A stretch of DNA of 58,233 nucleotides, counting the filler, from Dugesia japonica (lineage: Eukaryota), in the NCBI GenBank assembly GCA_001938525.1. It is 4 parts of 4 records of this genome, joined end to end, with 100 filler letters (N's around TTAATTAATTAA, not from the genome) between each part and the next. Parts side by side here need not be neighbours in the genome. Positions count along the whole stretch, not along the records: positions 9,663 to 37,029 come from MQRL01630142.1; 3 more parts are not named here. One strand, written 5' to 3'. Made by a program: the position numbers and the translations under genes. Below the pieces are notes generated by a model. That model had not been told where the DNA came from. It saw only the letters and a program-made list of their open reading frames with translations, and ran no database searches. Below are positions 10,496 to 51,354 of this stretch, one piece after another. How positions within the stretch are numbered: the stretch's first letter is position 1; each line of letters starts with the position of its first letter.

Positions 10496-10889
10496 ATATC
10501 CTTCTCAAAAAGATTAATATTTTCTAACAATTCATGAATTTCGTAAATACGATATTAAGTAACGAAAAAATTATTGGATAGAATTACAAAATTTAAAGCC
10601 TTGATATACAAACTATGACCCGCCTGCTTTAATTTTTGGCCCTTGAAACGTCTAATAAAATACCCAANNNNNNNNNNNNNNNNNNNNNNNNNNNNNNNNN
10701 NNNNNNNNNNNNNNNNNATATCCTTCTCAAAAAGATTAATGTTTTCTAACAATTCATGAATTTCGTAAATACGATATTAAGTAACGAAAAAATTATTGGA
10801 TAGAATTACAAAATGTAAAGCCTTGATATACAAACTATGACCCGCCTGCTTTAATTTTTGGCCCTTGAAACGTCTAATAAAATACCCAA
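10496..10889. repeat. 172-bp direct duplication flanking an N gap, likely an assembly artefact
   Basis: 10496-10667 and 10718-10889 are identical apart from two substitutions I could see. Confidence 0.75.
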
Positions 10890-11959: not shown

Positions 11960-12560
11960 AACTACATTTATCACCTTTAATAATATTTCTTATTGTGAAG
12001 TGTGGAAATGTAGCTCGTTCCTAATGTTTTCCATGTTATATGTCGTTCTGATGAAATTTTATGTTGGTGTTAAAGCATTTGAAGATTTCACTTTCATTTT
12101 GTTTCAGATGTTCCTTATTTTTTGTTCGGATGGTTCTGCATGTTTCACTTATAAATGTTTCTTGGCAAATGGTGCATGTTATTTTATAAGTGACATTTTT
12201 CTTATTGCATATTGAATTTCTACCATCACAAAGGTTTCTGTAATTGGATGCACAAAGGTGATTGAGTTCTGAATATAACTCTTGGATTGTGTTTGAGTTT
12301 CGATTTTTTAATTATATTTTGCATAATTGAACTACATTTCTCATTGATAAAACGTAATTTAATTATTGTGTTTGTTTTTTGTTTGATTTTATTAAATTTT
12401 GTATTCGAGGATAAATTATAATTAGATATAATTTTATTTGAGTAGCTTTAATTTAGGAATTAATTATTTATCAACTTGAGGGAAATCAATTTCATTTCTT
12501 CATTTGAAGATAGTCTTTAAGCTCGAATTCGTCCACTCTTGGTTATATTGTTAAATTCTG
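11960..12560 (-). mobile_element. Penelope-like fragment (GIY-YIG endonuclease end)
   Basis: ITCTICQETFISETCRTIRTKNKEHLKQ; similar to the copies at 34650 and 52525. Confidence 0.8.
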
Positions 12561-13620
12561 GGGAGAGATAAACATTTGTTGACATAATATTATAATACGA
12601 CTAGTGTTACAAAAACTTGAGCAGCCGGCCAATTTGACTGTACGCTGTTCGAGTTACAGCATCGATACGAATTTTTTACTGAAATCGAATGGTTGATAAA
12701 ATATTGAAGAAATTTAGATATTTTAATAGTAGTTTTTTGAGTTTATTTTGATAGCAAAGATCTAATCCCAAGATATAATACCGAAAATCCCGATATTGGA
12801 TGTTCAAATCAAGAGGTAAAATAAAAATTTTGTTTGAGAAAATGAATTAAATTCTCAGTAACATGATTTTTGAGATTTAAATTAATTTTGTCATAAAAAA
12901 TCGAGAACCGGAGAAGTTTTGAAGAAGTTTGGCATTTTTTGACAAGTGGGAGAAGGATTGTGTCGAAGATAAATTGGCATCAACAATTTTTTTTAACGAT
13001 TAATGTAATGAATTAGTTAAAATATTGATAATTTATGGGGGAGGGGCTACCGTTGGTTGACAAGCGGGAAGTTAAAAGTGTCTGAAAATTGTTGACATAT
13101 TAAACGGACATCTCATAATAACTATTGAAAATAATTCGGTAAAGTAATGAAAAAATATTTCCTAAAAAATACAAAATTCTAATTAATAATCAAATTAAAA
13201 TATACAAAAAAATTAATTTTTTAATTAAAAGTTTTCAAATTTAAATCAGTGCTTAAAAGATTTGTTCTCTCCGAAAAATTAATTTAGTCGCATTTGGAAG
13301 AATCAAAAAAACTATTCATGTTTCCAAACTTTCCACAAATTAAACTTAATTAAATTAATTAATTAATTAATTAAGCTTAAATTTATGCATTTTATCTTTA
13401 GACAATTTTGAAATTCTTTTTTCAAAACTAAGCAATTTTATCCAAAATTTTAATTCGTATAGACAGGGATTTAATTTAATTTACTTTAAATTTGATGCAA
13501 AACGTCAGATAATAAGTGCAAGAGAAAAATTCTAACCAATTTGTTCATTAGAATTATATTATTTATTCTAGTTATTAATAATTTTTATCATAAAATAAAC
13601 ATTTCAAATAATGGTGGCAC

Positions 13621-14294
13621 CTGTAAATGAGGCCAAGCAGCTTCTAAAGTTGGTTCATCTTCTTCTGGGTCATACTCCGCTCCCATTGGATTACTTGCTG
13701 GTGGTAGAGTGCGAAATAGATTTGCTGCTAACATTTTCACAATTTCTGGGTAAAGAGGTTCTGTTAGAACTCCTTGATTACTATTTATATACTCGATCAA
13801 TTCGTTAAGAGTTGATCGCTTAATTTCTTTATCTTTGAGATCACTGAGAGGATCAATGGCAAAATCAAAAACAACTGAACATTGTTCAATTTTCTTCATA
13901 AATAATTCTTCTTTTTCCGATGGTGAAGTATCTTTTAATAATGGAAGCTTTTTCAATTCCCGTTTCTGAGATATATTGAACACTGAAGATGCTCTTCTTT
14001 CACGTTTAACAGCTCCACTGCCAGCAATTGTTCCTTCTGCTTGACGAGTTTTGATTAATTGGGTTTGTGGTGGATAAGTAGCTTTAAGAAATTTATGATA
14101 ATTAACAAAATAATTTAAATTACTTTCAACAGGTGCTACAACTTTCTTTTCCGCCTCTTCTTTACGCGGTGATGATTTAGAATTATTCTAACATAACAGT
14201 CAAAAACTTTTAAAACAACAGAAAAATTTTTACATTCATATTAAAAGCAAAAATAAATGAAATTTACTTTTTCTTTTTTGGATTTAAGTGGCAT
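13621..14294 (-). CDS. PPP2R5D: PP2A B56 regulatory subunit (gamma/delta type), 5' part; exons 14268-14294, 14124-14187, 13621-14081
   Basis: MPLKSKKEK...PPQTQLIK...[23 protein letters not shown]...[19 protein letters not shown], with GT-AG introns of 80 and 42 nt in frame. Later exons not found before the contig end. PPP2R5C versus PPP2R5D is not resolvable. Confidence 0.92.
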
Positions 14295-14730: not shown

Positions 14731-17700
14731 CAGGGTTCGCCAACACGTCGACCCAGGGTGACTGGTCGCCCGCGAAGGGTTTGAAAATACCCCGTCACTT
14801 AAAAGTTTCACAATTTAATTTTCCTTATATTAATGTTTAAAATCTTAATTTAACATTTTATTTTTACAATAATAGGGTATTTGTGCAACAATCCATAATG
14901 TATGCATTTATCACGATAAATAGTAAAAATTAATGGTATCGTGTAAACTGATTATAGTAGCTATGCATTGGCATATAAAATGACAATTGCAAAAAATGCG
15001 CAAAATAATTTATCAGNTAGTAGAATTGATGAAATAGAATAAGATATTAAATTTGAAAACAAGCTTGCTATTTACAAGACCGTTGTTAAAACATACCTTT
15101 TTATTTTTATTATTGATTTAGAAATAATTTACGTATGCTTTATTATTAGAATTATATTATTGTTNNNNNNNNNNNNNNNNNNNNNNNNNNNNNNNNNNNN
15201 NNNNNNNNNNNNNNAATTAAGCTGTTAAAATAAAATTTATTTTTTTAGATTTCAATTAAGGTGATAGTTTCAAACTTCAAACACTTGCTACCACGTTTTA
15301 ATACACTCGTGTTTATTTACAATAATACGTTTTTTATAATTTCTACAACGAAACATAGCTGGTATGCTATTGTTAAATTTTTTTTGAAATATAATGAATA
15401 TTTATGTTGGGGTTTTATCTAGGGCGTCGATTTTTTATAATTAAGTCTAGGGTGATTGGCCTAGTAAAACCCCGAAAAGAATTTAATCTGGTGTCTTCAA
15501 AAATCCAGATCTTCGAAATGGAGCCGTTGACTCGGAATTCGAGTATAGACTCGCACTCCTTTAGTTCGGGTTCGTCTTCCGTGACACTTGCTCGACTTAC
15601 GAGACCTACTTATTATTATTTTATAAATTTCCAGTTTATGGAGCGTTTTTGATCTTAATTAATTATGGTATTAATAGTTATGAGATTAATTATCATAAAA
15701 ATAAAAGAATTTATAAGCGAATAACATATTAGGGTTATTAAACTTAACTTTTTACAAATTAATATACAATAATCAATAGAACTAACATAGTCTGAATCCC
15801 GATACGGAGAAAGCATAACACATAGATTGTCTCTTCTTCGGTAGCCATTAACGACTCGAGGGGTCCTTCATAATTTTCCATCTTCAAGTCAGAAATCGTT
15901 GCACCACAAATTTAAATAGAACAATAATTACCGTAATAATTTAGATTTTCTGGTTGACTTCAGTAATTTCAATTGGCGAAGATTGACAATTCTGGTTGAT
16001 TTCACTAATTTTTACTAGTGAAGATTGATTTTTGATGAAAATACATCAGTATTTTGCCGGTTTTCTTCTACACCTTCGTTCATTTCATTGGGTAATATAC
16101 ATTCTTGGTGTTTTTATTGGTCGGTTTATTTTAATTCTGTCACATGATTCTTCTTATTAGTTGGAATTTTGGAATTCTAAAATTTCTGGAGTTTCATTGG
16201 TTAACCTTCAGATCCTTGTATCTTTTTTCGGAGTCTTGGTACGATTTTTTAACTCAAAATTTTGAACTCCCCGATATTTTCTTGTCTATAATTCTTTTAA
16301 CTGCTAATTTTAATTTGACAGAAAACCTTTATTTTTCTCACTTTGTCAAAGATTTAATTTTCTTCTTTAAAATAAATCATTTTAAATCATATGATTTATT
16401 TTATTTAATTAAATAAATTATTTATTTTATTTCTTTTAAAATATTAATTAGATGTTCGTTTTTTTCTGGTCTAAAATTGATTTAATTTCGAAGTATTCTT
16501 CCACTTATTAATTCATTTAATTTATTTTCTCTTTCTTCGATTAATATGCTTTCTTTAATTTTGCCTAATGAATTAGATTCTTGGCTGTTATTTATTATTT
16601 TCTTTCTTTTCATAGCTGCTTTTTTTACTACTTTTTTTCTTTGATCTTCTTATTTCTACGTTGTTTCGTGCTGTAATGCTAGACTCTTCTTATTATCTTA
16701 AAGATTTTAACTATCTAATCTGGTTTTCTCATCCATTATTTCTGTTTTCAACTGAATTATGTTTTTCTTGGGTCTGAATTCTTTGTTTTCTTTTCTTATG
16801 TCAATCTTTAGAATTTCAAGTCCACTTAACACCATTTTTATTTTCTGTACCATGTGTTTCACTCCAACATTTATACCCTTTATTTTAAAATGAGTAAACC
16901 AACTATCAACCACAAAAACGTAAAAACTTATAATTATCATAGTGAATAGGAAGAAAATTATTTTTTATCATGTTAAAAAATAAATGTTCCTGTTTTATTT
17001 GCAATACTGTAGTAGCTTTGACAAAGAAAGCAAACGTTGAAAGGCATTATCTTGCAGTTTATAAAAATTATGAACAAGATTATTCACGTGGTACGGCGTT
17101 AAGAAAGGCCAAAGTTCAACAACTGGAGGGAGAGTTAACTGCGCAGCAAGATAGTCTCTTAAAGAACAACACCAACTCAAAGAGTGCTACAACTGCATCA
17201 TTCAAAGTTACTGATACTTTTATCAAACATAATAAACCGTTTCAAGATAGAGAAATATGGTAAGAGGCTTTTATTTAAGCCGAGAAGTGTTGTTTCAAAA
17301 TTTTAAAAAATAAATCGGAAATAATGACATTCAATAAAAATTTGTCGTTATCGAGAAATACAGTTATGCGTAGAACAGAGGGAATCAGCCAAAACTTTGA
17401 AGATGTTTCATATAAAAACATTAATAAATGCGTGGTATTATCACTACAATTTGATGAATTATCAGACTTTATTGGCACTGCACAATTATGTGTTTTATTC
17501 GAATGGTATTGGAGTATATGTCGGATACAGAAGAACTATTAACTATTATTCCAATGCATGAACGCACACGAAGTCAGGATAACTTTGATTTATTTAAAAA
17601 TTATATTGCTCGCACAAATTTTCTAATCTACAAATTAGTATTAATAACCACGGAATGATCGTGGTTAATAACTCCTGCAATGATCGGTAATAAAAGTGGC

Positions 17701-18911
17701 TTTATTGATCTTTGTAAATGTGATGATAACATTCCAGATTTTATAGATTTTCATTGTATTATACATACTCAAGTCTTATGCTAAAAAGTATTGAAATTTG
17801 AACATGTTATGGATGTTGCATTTAAGATATTAAATTCAATAAGATCTAAAAGTTTGTCACCTTGTCAGTTTCGCGCCTTGTTGAGAAAATGTATTGACGA
17901 GAACAGTGAACTGTTATTACATACAAAAATAAGGTTGTTAAGCCGTGCTATATTCTTAACTAGATCTAGAGATCTTCTGCAACAAATATGCTTATATTTA
18001 GAATCTAAAATTGATTCAGTTTCTCATTTTAAAAAAATCAAAAATGGCTTCTTGATCTTGATTTTTCTGCGATGTTACTGTAAAATTACAACAATTGAAA
18101 TTGAAACTGCAAGGTAAAGGTAAAACAATAATAGATATGGTAAACATATTGAAGTCATTTAAACAAAAAATCGAATATTCTTGTAATGCAATTAAAACGT
18201 GTTGATTTAAAGCATTATAAAAATTTAGTTGATGAGTCTAAAAATAAAATGAATCTTACTTACAATTAATATGCTGATATCATTGCATTGCTTCTAAAAG
18301 AATTTGACAAAATATTTTTAACACTGAGTAAACTTGAAGATATTGCAAGTTTCTTGTCTTACCTATTTAATGGTGACGTCGATGTTGAAAACATAGCTCA
18401 GAAACTAAACACCTTTCTCAANTCTACAAATATAGCAGACTTGGGAGAAGAAATAATACATATAAAATATGACATAAATCTTAAGTCAATGGTTTTTAAT
18501 TCTTATTTTTGAAAACTGATGAATAAAGATAAATATCCAAATATTTGGATAGTTGTCTCACGTTTCAATGCTTTCTTTGGATCAAAATATTTATGTGAAT
18601 CTGCATTTTTATTTATAAATGCGATCAAAACAAAAGATAGATCGCAATTAACAGATAAACATTTGGAAGCGTGTCTGAGAATTGTGTTAAGTTTGTATGA
18701 TCCAAACTTTGAAAACAACTGCAGCATTTATTCAATGTCAAATGTCGTTTAATTAAATATACTTATTTTCAAAGTTTTGTAATTTATTTGTCAAAATATC
18801 TTTAAAAAATATCAGAAATCCTAAATTTTTCCCTTTATATTCTTGTTCATATTGCAGATCATATTTTACAGAAAAAGAAGCCCATATGAGATAAAAGTTT
18901 GGACACATCTG
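14731..18911 (+). mobile_element. Near full-length degenerate hAT (Buster/Charlie) transposon; transposase pseudogene ~16890-18752
   Basis: Ends CAGGGTTCGCCAAC ... GTTTGGACACATCTG; flanks ATATACAC/ATATAATA. Motifs: BED finger CFIC...ERHY, SLQFDE, FHCIIH, LLHTKIRLLSR, FGSKYLCESAF. Confidence 0.85.
15405..16869. mobile_element. 1465-bp TGTTGGGG...CTCCAACA insertion, solo-LTR-like
   Basis: Perfect 4-bp TSD TTTA. Left end similar to 42138 onward. Right end (reverse complement TGTTGGAGTGAAAC) similar to the starts at 48404 and 23931. Confidence 0.85.
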
Positions 18912-19201: not shown

Positions 19202-20411
19202 TTATAGATGTAATTCTTATTTGTAATAGTTGCTACATATTTGTTTTACTACATCACCAAATTTCAGCTGAACAGATCGTAATTTAAAAAAGTTACAGTA
19301 ATTTATTTAATCTTCTTCTATGTGTAAGATGTATTAAATTCTGCGTCAAAAACGAAATTTAACGTCCCGATACCTTGAAAATGCTACAGAAGTGATATGG
19401 CAATAATGCTTTATCAAAATCAACAACTGATGAATGGTATACGCGGTTTTTAGATGATCGTAAGATTGTTACAGATGATTCTAGATCTGGAAGATCATTA
19501 ACCTCGAAGAACGACGAAAATATCAAAGAATTAAAGTCATTGTTAATGGAAAATAGGAAATTGACTATTAGAGAGATTATTGAAGATACAGGAATATCAT
19601 TTGGAACAGTTCAAACCATTTTGCATTAGGATTTGGGATTGAAACGTGTTGCTGCAAGACTTGTTCCATGTGAATTGAACATTTTTCAAAATTTAGTCGT
19701 GTTGAAATTTTAAGGGCCTTACTCTCTAACGTTGATTCTGATGAAACATTTATAAAACGTATAATTTCTGGTGATAAAACGTGGGTGTGTGAGTATGAAA
19801 CTCAAACAAAACATAAATAAAGTCAATGGCAGTCTCTGAAAGAGCCAAAACCGAAAAAACCATGTCGTTTTCTGTCAAAAAAAGAAGGTCATGCTGACCG
19901 TTTTCATCGATTCCGATGGAGTTGTACACCATAAATTTATTCGGGAAGATCAAACAGTCAGCAAGGAGTATTATCTAGTTGTTATGAGACGATCGCGTGA
20001 AGCTGTTTGTGTGAAAAGAAAAGATTTGTGGAGAAACATTGCCCGGATTTTACACCATGACGATGCACTAGCTCACAATGCAATATTTATTTGAGATTTT
20101 TTGCAAACACTCAATACAAATACTATTTAAGAAGCTTCGAATTCATCAGGTAAGGGTGTTTGTAACTTCTTTCTATTTAATAGACTGAAAAAACCACTTC
20201 GAGAAAAACGTTTTGATACCACTGAAGCGATGTATTGTTGGTATACCAAAGAAGGAGTTCCAGAAGGCATTTGAAAATTGGATTACACGCTGCCATAAGT
20301 GCATTGAAGTTAATAGAGACTACTTCGAAGGTGACAATTAAAATTGTGTTGAATAAATAGTTTGTTTTATTTTAAATTGAGTTTGCCAGGTATATTTTGA
20401 TCATAGTAGTA
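19202..20411 (+). mobile_element. Mariner element, degenerate transposase ~19330-20340
   Basis: DDSRSGRS, ARLVPCEL (WVPHEL-like), ISGDKTW, LHHDDALAH, FFLFNRLKKPLR; terminus TTTTGATCATAGTAGTA. Confidence 0.9.
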
Positions 20412-21859: not shown

Positions 21860-23660
21860 TATGGTCTGTGCGAATAATAAATTTCTTTCCCAATAAATAA
21901 TGCTTTTATTTCTTCACAAAGTAATAAACCGTCATGATTTCTTTCCTGATGATACAATACATTTTTTGTGCCTTTGAAAATTTCTTAGATTTATAGAATA
22001 TTAATTTATCTTTGTTATTTTGAATTTGACTTAAAACTGCTCCCATTCCAAAAGTAGTGTTGCTAAAGATCATGTTTCAGACTTTCAAAAGATTCTTTAT
22101 GAAATTTTTCCCATGTTAAATCTACCTTTTTTCCGTTTTTCGTGATGTTCACATTTCTTAAAATATCTTCTAGAGGTATAAGAATTTTTTTATATCTCCA
22201 AATAAATCTTCTGTAATAATTGCAAAACCCTAGAAAGCTTGATAATTCTTCATTTTTAATAGGAATACTCCAATTTTTTACTGCATTAATTTTTTCTGGA
22301 TCAGTCGTCACTCCTTTGTTTGATATTATGTGACCAAAATATTTTACTGAAGCTTTAAAAAAAACATTTCATAGGACATAACTTAGCTCTCGACTGCCTT
22401 ATCTTCATTGTGTTCCTCTATGCTTTTCCTGAAAATCAAAATATCATCGAGATATATTAAGCATTTATCTCTGAGAACTAAATTCATTAATCTTTGAAAA
22501 GTTGCTGGTGCTCAACAAAGTCCAAAAAACTATGCGATTAAATCAATAGAGAAATTTACTTGTAGCAAAAGCTGTTTTTCTTCTGTCTTTGTCTACATTG
22601 TAATGACCACTAGATTAATCAAGTGCACTAGAAAATCTTGATCCCGCAAATAAATCGAATAACTGTTGATTATCTGGAATATGATGTATAGGTCTGTTAG
22701 TAACTGAGTTTAATTTTCTATAATCTATACATAGCCTTATGTCTTCAGATTTCTTTTAAACAAACACAATAGGCGAAGACCACGGACTTGAACTCTAACG
22801 CATGATTCCGTTTTTTTTAAAGCTCTTTGATCATCTCATCGATTTCACTCTCTAGATGAAGAAGAGCTCTTTTTAATGGCTTAGCAATAGTTTAAAATCA
22901 ATAACATCTATTACGTGATACATTATTCACAGCTACAACCCATATATTTGCTATCTTATCTTTATAAGGACTAAATACAACTTCCTTCGAACAAATATCT
23001 GCACTATCTGCAGTGAGTAGAATCTGCACTCACTAAAAGAGTTACTTCTTCTTTTTTCTCAAAATTGTAACTTTATTGTCTAATGTAATTCTTATTGTAC
23101 AAATTTGAGCCTTCTTCACACTTCTTTCACCATTATTTGGACGCTCGGATACAGTGCTCTTTAGTTTTCAGTTAACTCTCTTATTTTGGATATGAAAGGT
23201 ACTTTTGTTTCACTTACAGCTACACAGTCTAGTTTTGGTAAAATTGAAATGTTCATCTTTTTCAAATCTCGTATTCATATTATGACTTTTTGGGAATAAT
23301 TTATTTACAATAGTCATCCTAATTCTACTAGTTTTATTTCCTTTTATTTTATTTATTTAATTTTATTTCTTGTTTGATCTTTTGAACTGGATACTTTAAA
23401 AAATCTGTTTCATGGTTTCTTTCTAAATACTTTTTACGATTTTCTAGCTCAATTATTCATCGTTTAAAGATTTCCATTTCTTGCAATTTTAACGTCATTG
23501 CTAATAATTCGCAATTTATCATTATACCGAGTTTTATCTTCTTTTTAAAATGAATTTAAAAGCTTTTTCCCGAGTTTAAAATCAATAATATCTATTACGT
23601 GATACATTATTCACAGCTACAATCCATGTGCTTGGTTTCATAATTTCCGTAACCCTGGCT
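21860..23660 (-). mobile_element. Ty3/Gypsy pol remnant (RT-RNase H)
   Basis: [56 protein letters not shown]; many frameshifts. Confidence 0.9.
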
Positions 23661-23930
23661 GCCAAACGATTATAAACCCCTTTCGAAAATATTGATAAGA
23701 GAGTTTTNTCTCTATCAAATTTATGATAAATGGCATTTCCCGAATTACATCAACTCTGATGGCATTTAGATACACTAATTAGTTAATATTATTAAAACAC
23801 ATATCACACATTATTTACGTGACATAGGAATTCGGGAAATATTATGAATTGTGAAAGATAAAACTTATGTTTAAAGTTATACAATGTGATAATAATTTCT
23901 TGTAATTTATTATTTAAAAAATAATAAATT

Positions 23931-26900
23931 TGTTGGGCTGAAATAGTCTATTTAATGATATAAACCATTTGGAGTAAAACCGAGAAAAGAATTGAGAATT
24001 GGAAATGTTCGAGAAATGATATTTAAGTCAGAACGAAAAACGAATGAAATAGAATAACAATGAACATCATCAAATCATCAATGAATTACTTGGTAAATAA
24101 TAAAAAGAAATATTATTAAACGAACTTACAAATTGAAACCGAAATTAGAAAACGAGCAGTGATATAAGAATTCCGAATAAAACAGATGCTCATACAAAGA
24201 ATAAAGTTGTAATTAGAACATCGATGCTCTAAGAAATATTTATTAAAACCAATAAATAATTAATTAAAATGATTGTAAGAAAATGGTAATTCGGTAATAA
24301 TAAGAATAAATGCCACCAGACAAATCGACACTTAAAGATAAAAAAGTGAACATGCAGAAATGATTAATGTTAGTGGAATCAAATAAATTAAAGACGAACA
24401 AATTGTTAAAATAAAATGATAAAAGAAGAATTAAATAAAAGACGAATAAATACTAAAATAAAATGTCGAAGAAAAGTGAATAAATAATAATGCTCAAAAA
24501 AATAATATCAATTGAGTTAAAGCTCAGAAATCACACCGATAGTGGTCAGATATAAAAGAGTTTAAATTAAATAATGATTGATCGAAATGAAGGATTGAAA
24601 GAAATGTTAAATGGAAAAGAACATATATTATTATTTACAATTTATTTAATTGTTATACAAGTAGAAATATAAAGAAATAGTTATTATAATATTATAAAGT
24701 AATTAAGTTAAGAAAGTAGAATTAAAACTAAAGTATTATACTAAAAGATTTTAATAAAATTGAAACGAACAGTTAGAAAAGAGTATGAAATAAATTGCTA
24801 TCATTATTATAATGTCAAAATATTAATATTATTAAAATAATGTAGTTAGGAAAAATCAGATTATTATAATAACGTATTTAAATAATTTAAATGAAATATT
24901 ATTATCTTGTAATTATTAATTTCATTATTATTAATTAAATATTATTATTTGTAAAGAAGGAACCAGAATTTTGAGAAGAAAGTTATATGTAATGAAAAGT
25001 GATAAAAGTTAAACGAGAATTAAATATTCGTAGTAAATTATGTAAATTTATTATGGAAATATCGGTAATTATATCTGAAATACAGAGTTTCCAAAATTAT
25101 TATTTTAAGCGATAAATATTATTAAAAATATTATTATTTGATAAATATATTTAAATTTGATGAAAGAAATAGAGATTGTAATAAAAATTATATGAGAAGA
25201 AAGAGGAGTTAATTTTATGTAAAAATTAATTAAGAGTATTTGATAATTTATATTTATCCATGTAGTTATTTGTATTTATAAATCGTTGACAAGTTTCAAA
25301 AATTATTATTTTTAACCAAAAATATTATTTTTTGGTTCGTGCAGGTTTATTGCTGGTAAATTTAATGATGCCGTGCAGGTATAAACAAGTGTTTATCGTT
25401 GCAATTTTTTGTAGAAATTGCTTTTCTTTAAGTCAGGTGAGCACAGNNNNNNNNNNNNNNNNNAGCATTAACTACACAAATTATAGAATTCTTTATGTGT
25501 AGGGTGAGCACCGCAAATGTGAACAAATCTACAAAAATCTATGATGCCGAGTGAGCACCAGTAATCATATGGAATCACTAACAAAGCATGAACACCGATA
25601 TGAAAAAATAAGTATGACTAAATATAGTCATCTATATAGAATCTGCGAGTAAGCACCGCGCGATTCTGTAAATATTGAAGCCGACACCCACCCACCTTGT
25701 CAATATATGGTGACAGAAAATGAGTATAAAAGAAATAACAAATTTCACAAAAAACTTACTAATTTCTCTCTTAAAAATTATTATTGATACGCTTATTAAC
25801 TTATCGTTAAAAGTTATAAGTCGTTATATTATTTCAATTTTTCGAAAAGAAATTGTGACAAAGTAATTTTATTAAATTGTTATTATTTATAAAAATATAT
25901 AAACGTAACACTGAGATGGTGGTCCTCATTGACTAGCAACGCTGGCAATGATGATCATCAGGAGTCAGAGATCCGGTGTCGCGAGATCATCCACCAACGA
26001 GAGATTTATAAATATGATGATTATGAGAGATATATGGATATGATAGATGTTAGCAACCGTGAGAGATATGTGATTATGAGAATGGTTAATGATTTAATGA
26101 TTATGAAATATGTTAATGATTCTGAGAGGTAAATGATTACGAAATATGTTAACGACTATGAGCACTAAATGATTATGAGAGATTCTTTGATTATGATACA
26201 GAGATGTTGATGTTGAAAGAGATATATGTTCATGAGTAGAGGCTAATAAATAAGATAACTAAAAGAAATATTAAACGATAGAATGATCATGGTAATGAAG
26301 CTTGGGTTAACATTGTTATATCATTGATGTGTGGTGGTTGAACGTTGTCTAAGCACTAATATAGTTGTGACTACAATGATTGAATCCTCATACCTATTAC
26401 CAATGTATTTATTTATGAAAAATATGAATTTAGTTTTCTGATATCGTTGAGACTTATTATTTCCTTTGTCAAATTATTTTGATGTTGATATCGTTATGTA
26501 ATTATATTAATAATTTTTCATAAATTATTATTACCCTTAGATAATTGATATTTTGTTGCAGTCGACATCAGGAGGGAGATGAGTTTTCCAGCGAAAAAGT
26601 AGTTATGAATTTATGTAGGAAGATTCCAGAAGAAATCGATTGATTATAATATATGATTGAAGTATGACCTATTTAATTCATGAAGGTCCAACTTCTTCTA
26701 CCATGAAGAGTGGTCGATAGTCTTTTGAGGCAGGGTCGATTTGTATTATGAAACTTCAAATTAGAATCTAATTAGGTATTATGTTAATGTTACTTTGGAT
26801 AAATATTTGTTTTATAAATCTATATATAATTTAAACATGGGAATATGTTTCTTTATTTAGATGACTCAGATTATAACAGTGGCAGGAGCAGAAATATCAT

Positions 26901-27668
26901 TATCTGTTACAGAGTAGAGTTTTAATATCACGAGATGCAATGATACACCTGGCGATCTAGATCCATGGTGGGTCACCCAGGACCAGTTATGCGCTAAAAA
27001 TAAAGAAATCAGTTCATTGCGTGCGCCTTTAACACGACAAAAGGAGCGATTTACTCCTGTATGGCAGATATAAAAGACAAATGGTGTTCAATACAAAAGA
27101 AATTAAAGAGCGAAATCATGGAACTACAGCATAAAAACGCACAGCTCCGAGACAAAGTAATTAAACTGAAAGTACGCGATCTCGCTTTGTCACAAACTTG
27201 CCGCACCATGGCGGATATCATTAAGGCGTATGCGGACAGAGAAAGTGTATTGATAGCGACTGTTCGAACATTAACGCAGGCATTGAAACCAGTGTCAGAA
27301 GTAGCCAAAGAAAGTCATCGAATCGGATGAGTTACAAACATTGATTAGAATAAAAGTATGTACAGAATGTATTTTGAATTTTGACTATAACCATAAGTTA
27401 ATAATGATTGATATTGATTTATTTTAAAACAAGAACCGGATAAAATAGAATTAGAAAACACAAGACGGGATACAGCATAGTCTCACTGATTCCGGGAATG
27501 GGGGATCATGTTGCTAGAGAAAGCAATGCAAAATTATGTGGTTACTAAGTATCGTCCCCCAGACAAAAATTATATTTAAGAGAAGAAACAATTAAGACCG
27601 AGAGATTAATAATAAAAATCAAGAAAAAACAAAACTAAAACAACATCAAAAAGCCTAGTAACCCAACA
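23931..27668. mobile_element. 3738-bp TGTTGGGCTGAAA...ACCCAACA insertion, giant solo-LTR-like
   Basis: Perfect 4-bp TSD AATT (23927-23930 and 27669-27672); 7-bp terminal inverted repeat; no transposase or RT motif seen. Confidence 0.8.
27061..27330 (+). CDS. Orphan coiled-coil protein carried by the 3.7-kb element
   Basis: 89-aa ORF followed by AATAAA at 27349; appears homologous to 51121-51354. Confidence 0.55.
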   Translation: MADIKDKWCSIQKKLKSEIMELQHKNAQLRDKVIKLKVRDLALSQTCRTMADIIKAYADRESVLIATVRTLTQALKPVSEVAKESHRIG

Positions 27669-28152
27669 AATTGATAAGATTACATGTTGAATTTGTGACA
27701 GAAATAAGATGTATATCGGGTTTTTAGATTATTTAGAGTATGAAATCCTGTACTAAGTAGAATGTAGTAGGCAGAGAAAAACAAATAAGAAACCAATTTT
27801 TCAAACGAGCATAAATATTCTAGTAAACAAAATTGTGAGGCATACATACCTCAGGATTTCCTAAATTTGGATCTAACATAATAAATAAAATTATTTATCA
27901 AAGATTTATTAACTTCTATTAAATGTACAAGCTTTCTAAAAAATGTTACCAAATAAAATTTACAATTTAATAAAATTTAATACAATTACAAAAATTAAAA
28001 AATTCTAAGAATTTCTTACTATTGTTCTTCAACTCTTAATTACCCTAAAAATTACTATTTAAAATTAACACTGTTTTTATATCTTTTTTGGAATATTCAA
28101 ACAACAAAAATTTTCACTTTCATATATTCCTTACAAAAATAGTTGATTGGTA

Positions 28153-28478
28153 CAGTGCAGTCTCGTTAACCCGTTGTCACTGAAGCGCGAGTTATATTTG
28201 TCATTTAACAAATAAGAAGGAAAATGTGCAAAACAATTCAAATACCAATATAACAAAACAATCACTTTTTAATCAATTAGTCTGTAATATTAAATGGTTT
28301 TCTAGAACGGTTTTGAAATTTTTAGCATTCCTGGAACATAGTTCTTGCTTGCAGGACTCGTGTCTGAATGTTCTTTTGTTCATAATAGTCCATGTATGTG
28401 TAAATTCGGGAGCAAGGCAGATCCACGGGTTAAGTAGAACCGTGGATTAACAAGGCACGGGTTAACGGGACTGCACTG
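28153..28478. mobile_element. Tc1/mariner (pogo/Tigger-like) MITE
   Basis: 22-bp TIRs CAGTGCAGTC(T/C)CGTTAACCCGT with TA on both sides. Confidence 0.9.
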
Positions 28479-28826
28479 TATTATTAATTTGGCAACCACA
28501 ACAGTGAAATCACGATTTTCAATAATTATCAATGTAATTATTCTAGTAATTAAAGCTGCTGTTACATTACGGATTTTGTCTAGATATTGCTGTAATAAAT
28601 CCAACAATTTACCATAAGTAAAAATTGTTTTATGATTGATTTGATTCAAAATCTCTAAAATATGAGCATATGAAACCACAAATCCTAATCGAGTTCGAAT
28701 TAAATTTTTAATTTAGACCAACATTTGTAATCTTCAGATATTTGTTTTAATTCATTACAATTAAAATTTATTTTCAAAAGTTTAGAAATTTAATATTTTT
28801 TTGAAAAGTTTTTATTTTAATATAAA

Positions 28827-29625: not shown

Positions 29626-29990
29626 CGTAGCGACGGGCGGGCAGGAACGTAATCATCACAAGCTAGTGACTTGCGTTTACTAGGAATTCCTTGCTCGTGT
29701 GAAATAATTACAATTCACAAACCATGTTACGACAGTTTCACAAGATTGCCCAACTATTTCTACATTGGAACTGCCATTGTAGCGCGCGTGCGGCCCCGGG
29801 CATCACAGACCTGTTATTATTGATTTTTTCATTTAGCTAGACGCTATTTATTCTTAGAAGTTATTCTTTACAAATTAGAATAAATACACTATTTAGCAAG
29901 TTAGATGCTCGTTCGTTATTGGAATTAACCTGACAAATCTCCACCAACTAAGAGCGGTCATGCGTTACCACCCGCCGAATCAAGATAGAG
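29626..29990 (-). pseudogene. Degenerate 18S rRNA 3' fragment
   Basis: The plus strand carries 18S reverse-complement landmarks GTAGCGACGGGCGG, ATTGTAGCGCGCGTGCGGCCC, GGGCATCACAGACCTGTTATT, CTCGTTCGTTATTGGAATTAACC and CCACCAACTAAGA. Confidence 0.9.
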
Positions 29991-30029
29991 TTGTTAAACT
30001 TCCCATTTTGTTGGTATAACTCATCTTGA

Positions 30030-32624: not shown

Positions 32625-33050
32625 TATTTCTCATTATAACCCCCGTTTACATTGACACACTTTTTCCAGCTATCAACCATTCCATCGATGCCCCTTTCAA
32701 AGAAATTTCGTTTCTTCTGCATAAGGAATTTTGTCACGTTGCCCTTTATATCATTCTTTGAAACAAGCTTATGTCCTTCATATATATTTCTTCAGATGAT
32801 TGAACAACCAGAATTCGCTTCGTGCAAGATCTGGACTGTATGGAGGATGATACAGCAGCAAAAATACAGTCTTTGTTAATGTTTCTTGTTTTCTTGTATG
32901 TGTTAATAGGAGCGTTATCATGGAGCAAATAAAGATTTTAGACAAAAAACTTGGTCCAACTGCATCCAGAAGACGAAGATACCTTTCACAGGTCATATTT
33001 TGTCTAGCCATAATCTCAGCTGTTAAAAATCTCGACATGGATCTGCTACA
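32625..33050 (-). mobile_element. Mariner transposase C-terminal remnant
   Basis: LHDNAP, HPPYSPDLARSEFWLFNHLK, FFERGIDGMVDSWKKCVNVNG. Confidence 0.85.
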
Positions 33051-34649
33051 CACGTATACATAACTTCTAATAATCTCTCATCGGGGATTATTTCTTTTAA
33101 TAATTTAGAATCCGTGGGAGATTATTAGAAGGTATTTTAAAAATATATTAAGTAAATAAATTGACTTATTTAAACTTAAAAAAGGAAAATATACTAATAT
33201 TTTTAATAATTTTATACAATATTTTAGAATTTAACCATTTTAGTTTAGAATTTTGATATAATTAAAAAAAANTTTTTATTTAAATAAATATTTTAAGAGT
33301 AAGAATTATTTGTTTGGTTTCTAAAATTTTTTATTAAAAATGTAGGCGTGGGGGATTTTTAGAAGATTTAGAGTATATATTTTATTTCAAAATTTGCTTT
33401 AGTTGTTCCTACTAAAGTCAATCAACCAACATAATATTAAATTTAATTTTAACTTGTTATTTAATATAAATGTCATTTTCTGTTGGGTATTTTGAGTAAT
33501 GTTTTTTCAGAGTTTGCACGGTGCTTACATATTCACTGATTCCTTTGATCAATTATCAAGTGGGAGAATATTTAGAACTATGTTTTCTATATTTTTAGAA
33601 AGTTTATTGGTAAAAATTATGAAGGAATTCTGACGAATAAACGAAACTACGAGATCATTATTCCTAATTTATACCAAAATATTATTTAGTAGAGTTGCTT
33701 TTTATGTAATAAGACAACAGGTGACCTAGAAATCTTTTTGTTACCTTATAGAAGCCTCAATTGGTGCAAATTTGTAAACAAAAGTTTATGGCGGTGTAAT
33801 GAGGGGATTGAATGCGGAAAAATTCACAGTATTACAGCGAAGCCTCCCTATTCCGCCAAACTTCGGGAATTGCTTAAAATAAATATTTTTGGCGGTATAG
33901 AAGAGTACCGATATGGAGGGGGGCGGTATATAGGGGTAGTGGTATAGAGAGGGTTGACTGTATAATTAATTTAAGTTTAACATTTCACAGATTTTATATT
34001 TGTAAAATTTCATTAGTAAAATTGAATAAAACTATAAAATTGAGAAATAATTTATTATCCATAAAACATTACGAAGCTGTCAATATTGATGATCATTAAT
34101 TAAAATTTGTAACTTCATTAATTTCTGTCTACCTCGCCGTTAAAAATGTTTCATTAAACACTGGCAACTGAATTTATAATATCATTAATAATTATTATTT
34201 CATAAAAACTACAAACACGGTTTTTCAGTTTGTATTTATTTAATTTTTTTTTGAAATTTTATTTCATGAAGAATTTTTAATTATCTCGATAAAATATTAT
34301 CTTTTAATAACATGAATGAAACTTTTNNNNNNNNNNNNNNNNNNNNNNNNNNNNNNNNNNNNNNNNNNNNNNNNNNNNNNNNNNNNNNNNNNNNNNNNNA
34401 TCTTTTATTAATTTCACTACATAATAGTTTTTTCTTTATCAAACCAATTAAAAATATTTTGTATTTTAATTTCTTAATTACTATTTAAAAAATTCCATTT
34501 AATTGTGTAATTAAAATCGGTAAGATTATTAAAAAAATATCATTTTATTTAAAATTTTTTCAAAAAATAGACAATGTATAATTTTTAGAACAGATAATAT
34601 ATTCTTTGCTAAATGTGGAGTTGTTAAATATGAAGGAGAATACTTAATA

Positions 34650-35150
34650 TATTTCTTCAAATAAAAAATATAATAAAATCAAACCAAAAACAAATACAGT
34701 TATAAAATAACTTTTATTAACAACAAATGTAGCCAATCATGCAAAATATAATAAAATAATCCAAACTCAAGCATAATACAAGAATTACATTCAAAACGCA
34801 AGTACCTTTGGGCATNNNNNNNNNNNNNNNNNNNNNNNNNNNNNNNGGTCCCAAATGTATTTGTGATGGTAGAAATTTATACAATAAGAAAAACGTTACT
34901 TTTAAAATATCATTCACCATTTGTAAGGAGACATATATAGGAGAAACATGCAGAACTATTCGAACAAGAATCAAAGAACATCTCAAACAGAAAGAAAGTG
35001 AAGTTTTCAAACACAACACATACATAAAATTTCACCAGAATATCACATAACATGGAAAACACTGAGAACAGGCTACATTTCCGCACTTCACATGAAAATA
35101 CCCGAAGAATTATTAATTAAAGAAGATAATCCTAAAATGAATATAACTTA
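34650..35150 (+). mobile_element. Penelope-like fragment (GIY-YIG)
   Basis: CKETYIGETCRTIRTRIKEHLKQ. Confidence 0.85.
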
Positions 35151-51120: not shown

Positions 51121-51354
51121 GCCAATAGTAAGGTACTTTGGTATAAGTAAAAATGCATTGCCTTCAAAAAGAAAGCCGAAGCCTCACACACCCAAGAGAG
51201 AGTGTGGAAAGGGCAAGTTGAGTTCTTCGCTGAAATTATCCGGTTCCACCCTGACCGAGAGAATAAATTGGTCAGCGACATTTTGCATCTCAAGGAGAAA
51301 ATGTCTCTCAAACCTATGATGATAGCTAAAAGCACTCAAACTCCACGGCCGTAG
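51121..51354 (+). pseudogene. Coiled-coil ORF homologous to 27061-27330 (one in-frame stop, probable 5' frameshift)
   Basis: FAEIIRFHPDRENKLVSDILHLKEKMSLKPMMIAK versus MADIIKAYADRESVLIATVRTLTQALKPVSEVAK; AATAAA at 51380. Confidence 0.55.

What the first reader, a model, noticed from the sequence alone, without database searches (positions are those of the whole stretch)
27061..27330. Orphan coiled-coil protein apparently conserved between the two divergent 3.7-kb elements
Seen: ORF 27061-27330 (LKSEIMELQHKNAQLRDK...MADIIKAYADRESVLIATVRTLTQALKPVSEVAK) aligns almost without gaps to a frame absent from the ORF track at 51121-51354 (ANSKVLWYK*KCIAFKKK...FAEIIRFHPDRENKLVSDILHLKEKMSLKPMMIAK). The shared pattern is A[DE]II[KR]xxxDRExxL...LKP..[VI]AK. 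Both lie near the CCAACA end in the same orientation and are followed by AATAAA. Inference: protein conservation without visible DNA identity implies past selection on an element-encoded accessory gene of unknown family.
Basis: partly seen in the sequence, partly recalled or inferred. Interest (0 to 1): 0.75.

Follow-up and report, generated by a model that had tools for sequence, protein, structure and literature searches.

The report
Unnamed helical protein in conserved two-gene cassette
The 89-codon reading frame is a real gene: it belongs to an unnamed family of small helical proteins that elsewhere always follows a second small gene and precedes a strongly conserved RNA-type hairpin, but nothing shows that the cassette is a mobile element.

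Summary
ORF 27061-27330 (+, 89 aa) exists, is followed by AATAAA (27349) and lies 330 nt before a CCAACA-containing end (27662-27672).

Independent relatives confirm the conservation. There are 18 unnamed proteins of 63-115 aa in six public samples. The window ORF scores 77 bits against their profile; the best of 10,000 shuffles, half of them heptad-preserving, scores 30. Synonymous sites are saturated while amino-acid change is low, so the family is under purifying selection. AlphaFold predicts one 74-residue helix. Pfam, PDB, Foldseek and viral collections give no match.

In all seven relatives with enough upstream DNA, the gene ("B") follows a second conserved helical ORF ("A", 148-171 aa). 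AATAAA and then a conserved hairpin with compensatory changes follow it. Noncoding parts are C-poor on the sense strand.

The window copy is reduced. A is probably a short N-terminal remnant with one in-frame stop, B has lost the family's acidic tail, and the hairpin has one mispair.

Best reading: a diverged, partly decayed copy of an old, low-copy, co-transcribed two-gene cassette. Membership of a transposon is unproven.

The parts
23927..27672 (+). The '3.7-kb unit'. Its bounds are tentative: a compositional domain (G>C and A>T on the + strand) delimited by an 11-nt inverted pair.
   Evidence: The GC skew turns positive near 23.85 kb and negative near 27.75 kb. The inverted 11-mers were located. 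No LTR or longer terminal repeat was found.
23927..23937 (.). Left 11-mer AATTTGTTGGG, the reverse complement of the right end.
   Evidence: It occurs once in the piece. A match this short could be chance.
23938..26860 (+). C-poor, AT-rich upstream region without long ORFs. It holds tandem and ATGA-rich repeats (26014-26225), four GTGAGCAC-type motifs (25436-25660) and an N gap (25447-25463, left as it is).
   Evidence: C is 9% and G 16%. The same C-poverty is seen upstream of ORF-A and between A and B in every related locus. Repeats.
26861..27070 (+). Probable remnant of the partner gene ORF-A: the N-terminal ~70 codons only, with one in-frame stop. The ~100 codons of A's coiled coil and the A-B spacer seen in relatives are absent.
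   Evidence: The tblastn hits of L009_A (residues 9-79, 28.1 bits, 0 of 300 shuffles as good), L007_A (26.9 bits, 2 of 300) and L001_A (weak) are colinear here. The T-rich tract plus AG directly before the ATG matches that in relatives. Against: a family-wide A profile finds nothing on the stop-free pieces.
27061..27330 (+). The finding: ORF-B, 89 aa, a single long helix and a member of the unnamed family.
27349..27354 (+). AATAAA, a likely polyadenylation signal.
   Evidence: AATAAA lies 5-57 nt after the stop in 10 of 10 related loci and 19 nt after it here. The background rate is 3.6 per kb.
27462..27500 (+). Conserved hairpin motif (AAGA, a 6-bp stem, an 8-nt loop, the stem's return strand, CTGA, then about 10 more conserved bases). 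The window copy has one mispair and one extra wobble pair.
   Evidence: The pattern is found once in the window and in 0 of 100 shuffles. It occurs at the equivalent place in L001, L005, L006, L007, L008 and L009 and in L023. On the seven sequences aligned (the window and six of these loci; L023 not included), 97.6% of cells pair, against 33-52% when the partner is slid, and two pairs show compensatory changes.
27662..27672 (.). An A-rich stretch (27600-27655) precedes it.

Best explanation
The ORF is a diverged and probably decaying paralogue of the downstream gene (B) of an old, low-copy, co-transcribed two-gene cassette.

Shown: B is a small protein consisting of one long helix. Its C-terminal half carries an invariant polar and aromatic face (R..AD..K.YADRE...RT). 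In relatives it ends in a hydrophobic-acidic tail ([VI]-D-L-D or I-x-L-D). In every relative with enough upstream DNA, a second helical ORF (A) lies 160-351 nt upstream on the same strand. AATAAA follows B, and a strongly conserved hairpin lies 106-167 nt after the stop.

Inferred: A and B are made from one C-poor primary transcript. That transcript is processed at the AG acceptor-like sites that sit 0-7 nt before each start, in the operon style of animals with spliced-leader trans-splicing. B oligomerises as a coiled coil, possibly with A. The invariant face is its specific binding surface and the acidic tail is a short docking motif of the SUMO-interaction or clathrin-box type. The hairpin is a cis-acting RNA signal for 3' processing, localisation or stability.

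In the window the cassette is reduced. A is a short remnant with one stop, B has lost the tail and one near-invariant Asn, and the hairpin is weakened.
For: Family and significance. Helix.

Purifying selection.

A-B synteny in L001, L002, L005, L006, L007, L009 and L023. The A proteins are homologous to each other (7e-17; alignment).

AATAAA in 11 of 11 loci. Hairpin conservation and covariation.

Acceptor-like T-rich tract plus AG before the ATG of A in 7 of 7 loci and before most B starts.

C-poor noncoding sense strand in all loci and in the window.

The spacers (160-351 nt) are close to the range used to call flatworm operons: a 300-bp cut-off in PMC12582326, and 200-1000 bp in the earlier studies it cites.

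Low copy number (one member and one contig per cluster).

A remnant in the window.
Against: No transcript evidence was available, so co-transcription, splicing and trans-splicing are inferred from sequence alone.

The source organisms of the related contigs are unknown, and all those contigs are 2.2 kb or shorter.

The A remnant is not recovered by a family-wide profile.

The hairpin lies downstream of the first AATAAA, so it may not be part of the mature B mRNA.

The window unit does have short inverted ends and an A-rich right end.

The function of the proteins is entirely inferred.
Confidence: 0.5

Rival explanations
1. The cassette is the coding core of a non-autonomous mobile or selfish element of about 3.7 kb. 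The two coiled-coil proteins would be element proteins comparable in role to the coiled-coil ORF1 proteins of non-LTR retrotransposons. The conserved 3' hairpin would be the recognition signal used by an enzyme supplied in trans. The window copy would be an old, decayed insertion.
For: The compositional domain has sharp edges that coincide with an 11-nt inverted pair. The right end is A-rich. The sense strand is purine-rich and C-poor. The 3' hairpin is the best-conserved piece of the unit. Several divergent copies occur per sample: L001, L006 and L023 in one run, and L005 and L009 in another. Five contigs stop exactly at the hairpin, as expected if its k-mers are shared by several copies. The unit sits among transposon debris.
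Against: There is no polymerase, integrase or transposase, no LTRs and no long terminal inverted repeats, and I recognised no target-site duplication. Clusters have one member on one contig. Paralogues are saturated at synonymous sites yet conserved in protein, which is the pattern of old genes and not of recent insertions. Flanks other than the hairpin share no DNA similarity. No match was found in IMG/VR.
Confidence: 0.25
2. B alone is a functional single-copy host gene in this lineage. The upstream 'A remnant', the weakened hairpin and the inverted ends are coincidences or lineage-specific remodelling, not decay.
For: The B frame is intact and keeps all eight invariant residues. AATAAA is in place. 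The A profile does not detect the remnant.
Against: Three A proteins hit the same 200 nt directly upstream of B, colinearly and on the right strand. The start context is identical to that of relatives. B lacks the otherwise universal acidic tail and the near-invariant Asn.
Confidence: 0.15
3. The ORF is a remnant of a virus integrated in the genome, carrying a structural or scaffold-like coiled-coil gene.
For: The only support is weak sub-threshold Pfam hits to phage scaffold and other coiled-coil families in a few members.
Against: There were no relatives in 2.9 million viral contigs by nucleotide or protein pattern. There was no Foldseek match in BFVD. No viral hallmark gene lies nearby.
Confidence: 0.03
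4. The ORF is a chance open frame in locally GC-richer DNA.
For: An ORF of this length arises in 10-18% of random sequences of this composition. The antisense frame is also open for 85 codons.
Against: It scores 77 bits against a profile of 18 independent relatives, against at most 30 bits for 10,000 shuffles. The conserved neighbours (AATAAA and the hairpin) are in the expected places.
Confidence: 0.01

Closest known systems
Operon-like gene pairs resolved by spliced-leader trans-splicing in flatworms and other trans-splicing animals
   Same: Two short genes lie on one strand 160-351 nt apart. An AG acceptor-like site sits directly before each start, and a polyadenylation signal follows the downstream gene. 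The spacing is close to that used to call flatworm operons (PMC12582326).
   Different: No spliced-leader reads or transcripts were available. The organisms of the related contigs are unknown. The conserved downstream hairpin is not a described operon feature.
Coiled-coil ORF1 proteins of non-LTR retrotransposons, and ORF1-only derivatives
   Same: These are small proteins dominated by a long coiled coil, encoded on a purine-rich sense strand upstream of a conserved 3' stem-loop.
   Different: No RRM, C-terminal domain, zinc knuckle or esterase domain was detected. No Pfam hit to any ORF1 family was found. No reverse transcriptase is linked. Copy number is low and the paralogues are ancient.
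Small stand-alone coiled-coil proteins (best sub-threshold hits: SKA2 PF16740, short coiled-coil protein 4bwd, BAP31 coiled coil 4jzl)
   Same: The length is about 90 aa and the protein is predicted as a single long helix.
   Different: All hits are below the curated cut-offs and differ from member to member. None shares the YADRE core. They reflect composition, not homology.
Conserved 3' stem-loops that act as cis signals (3' tails of stringent LINE/SINE pairs; histone mRNA 3' stem-loop), cited from general knowledge
   Same: A short hairpin with compensatory changes sits at a fixed distance after the stop and is far better conserved than its surroundings.
   Different: No Rfam family matches. 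The loop is 8 nt. The hairpin lies after an AATAAA. No partner enzyme or binding protein is known.

Membership tests
The unnamed 'B' family defined here (alignment A3) | Length about 63-115 aa, one long helix, and the invariant L, R, Y-A-D-R-E and T columns. | tested here: met
   All eight invariant columns are present in the window ORF. It scores 77 bits against a profile built without it. Helix 2-75.
The unnamed 'B' family defined here (alignment A3) | C-terminal hydrophobic-acidic tail ([VI]DLD or IxLD), and the near-invariant Asn before the invariant Arg. | tested here: not met
   The window ORF ends in a different, basic and polar tail and has Cys at the Asn column.
A-B cassette | ORF-A of 148-171 aa lies upstream on the same strand, with a spacer of 160-351 nt. 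| tested here: inconclusive
   The window has only a probable ~70-codon N-terminal remnant, directly abutting B, with one in-frame stop. It is not detected by the A profile.
A-B cassette | AATAAA lies shortly after the B stop, and the conserved hairpin lies about 105-170 nt after the stop. | tested here: met
   AATAAA lies 19 nt after the stop and the hairpin 132 nt after it. The hairpin stem has one mispair.
Spliced-leader trans-spliced operon | Same-strand genes with a short intergenic distance, and 3' splice acceptors upstream of each cistron. | tested here: met
   Spacers of 160-351 nt in relatives. A T-rich tract plus AG lies 0-7 nt before the starts. This is judged from sequence only.
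Spliced-leader trans-spliced operon | Spliced-leader sequence joined to the mRNAs, and a polycistronic precursor. | not testable with these tools
   No read-level RNA data were available for the source species.
Non-LTR retrotransposon ORF1 / ORF1-only element | A recognisable ORF1 domain (RRM plus C-terminal domain, zinc knuckle or esterase), and a linked or partner reverse transcriptase. | tested here: not met
   No Pfam hit for any of the 19 B or 7 A proteins. No RT ORF lies in 23927-27672.
Terminal-inverted-repeat DNA transposon | Terminal inverted repeats, a target-site duplication and a transposase (or clear derivation from an autonomous copy). | tested here: not met
   Only an 11-nt inverted pair was found. 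I saw no flanking direct duplication. There is no transposase. The mariner fragments at 19.4-20.3 kb are outside the unit.
LTR retrotransposon / solo LTR | Long terminal direct repeats, and gag/pol remnants. | tested here: not met
   No direct terminal repeats were found. The RT-RNase H fragment at 21909-22368 is on the other strand and outside the unit.
Helitron | A 3' hairpin a few bases before a terminal CTRR, at the true end of the element. | tested here: not met
   The hairpin is followed by CTGA. However, 8 of the next 10 bases are still shared in fixed register between the window and L007, and L001 continues in the same way. No Rep or helicase is present.
Known structured RNA families (Rfam 15, including self-cleaving ribozymes, snRNAs and SL RNAs) | A covariance-model match. 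| tested here: not met
   No match at E<=1 in six related loci, and none at E<=5 in window 23500-28200 apart from a chance snoRNA-like hit.
SKA2 (PF16740) / bZIP_2 (PF07716) | A score at or above Pfam's gathering cut-off, shared by family members. | tested here: not met
   17.4 bits against a cut-off of 30.1, and 17.7 against 22.3. Only 1 of 19 members matches each.
Endogenous viral element | Relatives in viral genomes, or linked viral hallmark genes. | tested here: not met
   Searches gave no viral match.

The most novel reading that the evidence does not exclude
The A-B-hairpin cassette marks a previously undescribed, ancient, low-copy selfish or mobile unit of invertebrate genomes. It would be about 3.7 kb long, have short inverted ends and encode no enzyme of its own. 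Its two coiled-coil proteins and ultra-conserved 3' hairpin would form a ribonucleoprotein that depends on host or partner-element machinery.
Probability: 0.15. Interest if true: 0.7.

Novelty: new variant of a known kind. Interest (0 to 1): 0.45.

Why it matters
Two protein families and a conserved hairpin carry no name, Pfam model, solved structure or Rfam model. Even so, they have stayed together under purifying selection long enough to saturate synonymous sites. If the cassette is an operon-like gene pair, it is a compact test case for polycistronic processing and for an unknown cis-acting RNA signal in trans-splicing animals. If it proves to be a mobile unit, it would be one without any recognisable enzyme. 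Either way, the family can now be annotated in place of being discarded as an orphan ORF.

Tried and rejected
- **Word-index protein search with the single ORF:** nothing found. The exhaustive phmmer run was needed.
- **Exact look-up of the ORF in public assemblies:** not on record.
- **Second copy inside the piece:** none found.
- **Pfam, PDB sequence profile and Foldseek against PDB and BFVD:** only sub-threshold coiled-coil noise or nothing.
- **A and B as paralogues of each other:** rejected (hhalign probability 4.6%).
- **Hairpin pattern in JGI metagenome contigs:** 13 hits, all on contigs of 61-71% GC that encode neither A nor B, so they are chance matches. In viral contigs: none.
- **Known ribozyme or snRNA for the hairpin:** no Rfam match.
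- **Helitron end:** rejected because conservation runs on past CTGA.
- **Longer conserved RNA domain after the hairpin:** the window against L007 is not significant by shuffled local alignment (344 of 2000 shuffles as good). Consensus folding of three sequences was uninformative.
- **Terminal motif CCCAACAA in relatives:** seen only in L007 and L008, so it is not a family feature.
- **GTGAGCAC repeat:** specific to the window.
- **Sample accessions in the literature:** no hits, so the organisms remain unknown.
- **Structure prediction of ORF-A from locus-derived sequences:** I did not send them elsewhere and used only P0006 and P0007. This gave a low-confidence model with one long helix.
- **Family-wide A profile on the window's stop-free pieces:** no hit.

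Full report
**Setting.** The usable piece (9663-37029) is AT-rich eukaryotic DNA, with GC of 0.21-0.36.
- It holds a host exon of the PP2A B56 subunit at 13588-13983 on the minus strand (Pfam 4e-38).
- It also holds much transposon debris: a mariner-type transposase fragment at 19396-20338, an RT-RNase H fragment at 21909-22368 on the minus strand and a GIY-YIG fragment at 34847-35047.
- An isolated 18S rRNA fragment lies at 29799-30016.
- I could not establish the organism.

**The observation.**
- ORF 27061-27330 (+) exists and reads as quoted.
- AATAAA follows at 27349.
- CCAACA lies in CCCAACAAATT at 27662-27672. The exact reverse complement lies at 23927-23937. These two 11-mers bracket a 3.74-kb domain in which the + strand has G>C and A>T. 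A '3.7-kb unit' is therefore visible in composition.
- I found no LTRs, no longer inverted repeats and no flanking duplication.
There is no second copy inside the piece.
- ORF length alone is not significant: 10-18% of random sequences of this composition have an ORF at least as long. An antisense frame of 85 codons is also open.

**The ORF is a member of a real family.**
- The word-index search found nothing, and Pfam gave only sub-threshold coiled-coil hits. I therefore used the exhaustive search.
- phmmer against 1.84 billion representatives returned four proteins of 83-112 aa at E 1.6e-8 to 4e-6.
- A profile search raised the family to 18 proteins of 63-115 aa. None carries a name or a Pfam domain, and almost all are one-member, one-contig clusters (alignment A3).
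- Against a profile built without it, the window ORF scores 77.0 bits. The maxima are 14.2 for 5000 plain shuffles and 30.2 for 5000 shuffles that keep the heptad register.
- AlphaFold2 on A3 gives one helix over residues 2-75 with mean pLDDT 91.9.
- A PDB sequence profile, Foldseek against PDB and BFVD, and per-member Pfam scans give nothing consistent.

**Selection.** Nei-Gojobori counts on the B genes show synonymous differences of 0.70-1.0 per site (saturated), against 0.16-0.50 for nonsynonymous differences. The closest pair (L007 and L008) has 6 coding differences and no amino-acid change. Copies from one sample are as saturated as copies from different samples, so they are old paralogues and not recent insertions. 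I cannot exclude that a sample holds several species.

**Context in relatives.** Ten loci were fetched. All are contigs of 2.2 kb or less, from three Logan runs, two ENA assemblies and one JGI data set.
- Each of the seven loci with enough upstream DNA has a second ORF, 'A' (148-171 aa), on the same strand 160-351 nt upstream of B.
- The A proteins are homologous to each other (7e-17 between L001 and L002; alignment A4).
- They have no Pfam match and are unrelated to B by profile comparison.
- A shallow AlphaFold model of A shows a low-confidence N-terminus and a helix over residues 62-127.
- The starts of A (7 of 7, counting the window) and of most B genes sit 0-7 nt after a T-rich tract ending in AG. 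In four related loci the B homology begins directly at such an AG without an ATG.
- AATAAA follows the B stop within 5-57 nt in all ten loci.
- The noncoding parts of every locus are C-poor on the sense strand (C 8-12%, GC skew up to +0.56). The same holds for window 23938-26860.

**The hairpin.**
- A roughly 30-40-nt motif lies 106-167 nt after the stop in seven related loci, and at 27462-27500 in the window.
- It is 94-100% identical between paralogues that share no other noncoding similarity.
- It folds as a 6-bp stem, extendable by two pairs across a bulged A, with an 8-nt loop.
- Over the seven aligned sequences (the window and six related loci), 97.6% of cells pair, against 33-52% for slid controls. 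Two pairs change on both sides. These two changes separate one clade from the rest, so they may represent few events.
- Five contigs end at the motif. I read this as assembly breaks at k-mers shared among copies.
- No Rfam family matches.
- Beyond about 10 nt after CTGA, the similarity between the window and L007 is not significant.

**State of the window copy.**
- B is intact and keeps all invariant residues. It lacks the acidic [VI]DLD or IxLD tail of all full-length relatives, and it has Cys at a near-invariant Asn.
- Directly upstream, in another frame, 26861-27070 matches the N-terminal 70-80 residues of three A proteins colinearly. L009_A scores 28.1 bits (0 of 300 shuffles as good) and L007_A scores 26.9 bits (2 of 300). 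The start context is the same as in relatives.
- This stretch carries one in-frame stop. Compared with relatives, the rest of A and the spacer are absent, which I count as one inferred deletion.
- A family-wide A profile does not detect the stretch, so I call the remnant probable and not proven.
- The hairpin has one mispair and one extra wobble pair.

**Interpretation.** The data fit best an old, low-copy cassette (A, B, AATAAA, hairpin) transcribed as one unit and processed at acceptor sites, as in operons of trans-splicing animals. The spacing used to call flatworm operons is a 300-bp cut-off in PMC12582326 and 200-1000 bp in the earlier studies it cites. The window would hold a reduced paralogue.
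- The proteins' function is inferred only. I propose coiled-coil oligomers with a conserved binding face and a docking tail.
- The mobile-element reading is not excluded. In its favour are the compositional edges, the short inverted ends, the A-rich right end, the conserved 3' signal and several copies per sample.
- Against it, there is no enzyme, no repeat structure and no evidence of recent copies.
- Viral origin and a chance ORF are effectively excluded.

- The N runs (for example 25447-25463) were left as they are.

- While brainstorming, I recalled from memory short stretches of a few ordinary cellular proteins, a ribozyme core consensus and a histone stem-loop. This was in my reasoning only, not in any call, note or this report.
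- Before I recognised 26861-27070 as a broken gene, translation outputs displayed its stop, and I reasoned about where it lies. I give only the count here.

Noticed in passing
window 29799-30016 (-): An isolated 218-nt fragment of eukaryotic small-subunit rRNA (Rfam RF01960, 100 bits, model positions 1229-1473) lies in AT-rich non-rDNA surroundings.
   Followed up: no
window 11994-12424 and 34641-35092: Four colinear blocks form an inverted repeat, 79-83% complementary and 22 kb apart. The right arm overlaps a GIY-YIG domain fragment at 34847-35047 (Pfam 1.2e-4). These are probably two old copies of one repeat family in opposite orientation.
   Followed up: partly
window 19396-20338 (+) and 21909-22368 (-): A mariner-type transposase fragment (Transposase_1, 2e-10) and an RT-RNase H fragment of an LTR-type retroelement (RT_RNaseH_2, 1.6e-10) lie just left of the unit. 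Both are in pieces.
   Followed up: partly
window 13588-13983 (-): An exon-like ORF matches the N-terminal 112 positions of the PP2A B56 regulatory subunit (Pfam 4e-38). It is the only clear host gene seen in the piece.
   Followed up: partly
window 25436-25660 (+): There are four copies of a GTGAGCAC / GTAAGCAC motif, spaced 47-98 nt apart, each resembling a 5' splice donor. They lie in the C-poor region upstream of the cassette, next to an N gap (25447-25463). The motif is absent from the related loci.
   Followed up: partly
window 26014-26225; L007 1-400; L009 430-600: ATGA/TGAT-rich, nearly C-free tandem repeats lie upstream of ORF-A in the window (36-nt period). Repeats of similar appearance lie upstream of ORF-A in two related loci. 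Whether they are homologous is not established.
   Followed up: no
L001 1396, L006 1637, L023 1116, L005 about 1747: In four related loci the B homology starts at G|TG directly after an AG, with no ATG at the position where other members have ATG. This suggests a non-AUG start or a start supplied by splicing.
   Followed up: no
C-termini of ORF-A in L001, L006 and L023, and of most B proteins: Both partners of the cassette end with a similar hydrophobic-acidic motif (VIDVDLD or IIDVDE in A, [VI]DLD or IxLD in B), although their profiles are otherwise unrelated.
   Followed up: no
window 10496-10667 and 10718-10889: A 172-nt direct repeat, 99% identical, is separated by a 50-N gap. It looks like an assembly duplication around a gap.
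   Followed up: no
window 28383-28712 (-): A 110-codon open stretch just right of the unit has a weak, sub-threshold hit to the phage-integrase SAM-like domain (E 0.044). This is probably chance.
   Followed up: no
window 16970-18117 (+) and 32778-33053 (-): By eye these ORFs resemble hAT-type and Tc1/mariner-type transposase pieces. Pfam gave only a weak zinc-finger hit for the first and nothing for the others, so this is unconfirmed.
   Followed up: partly
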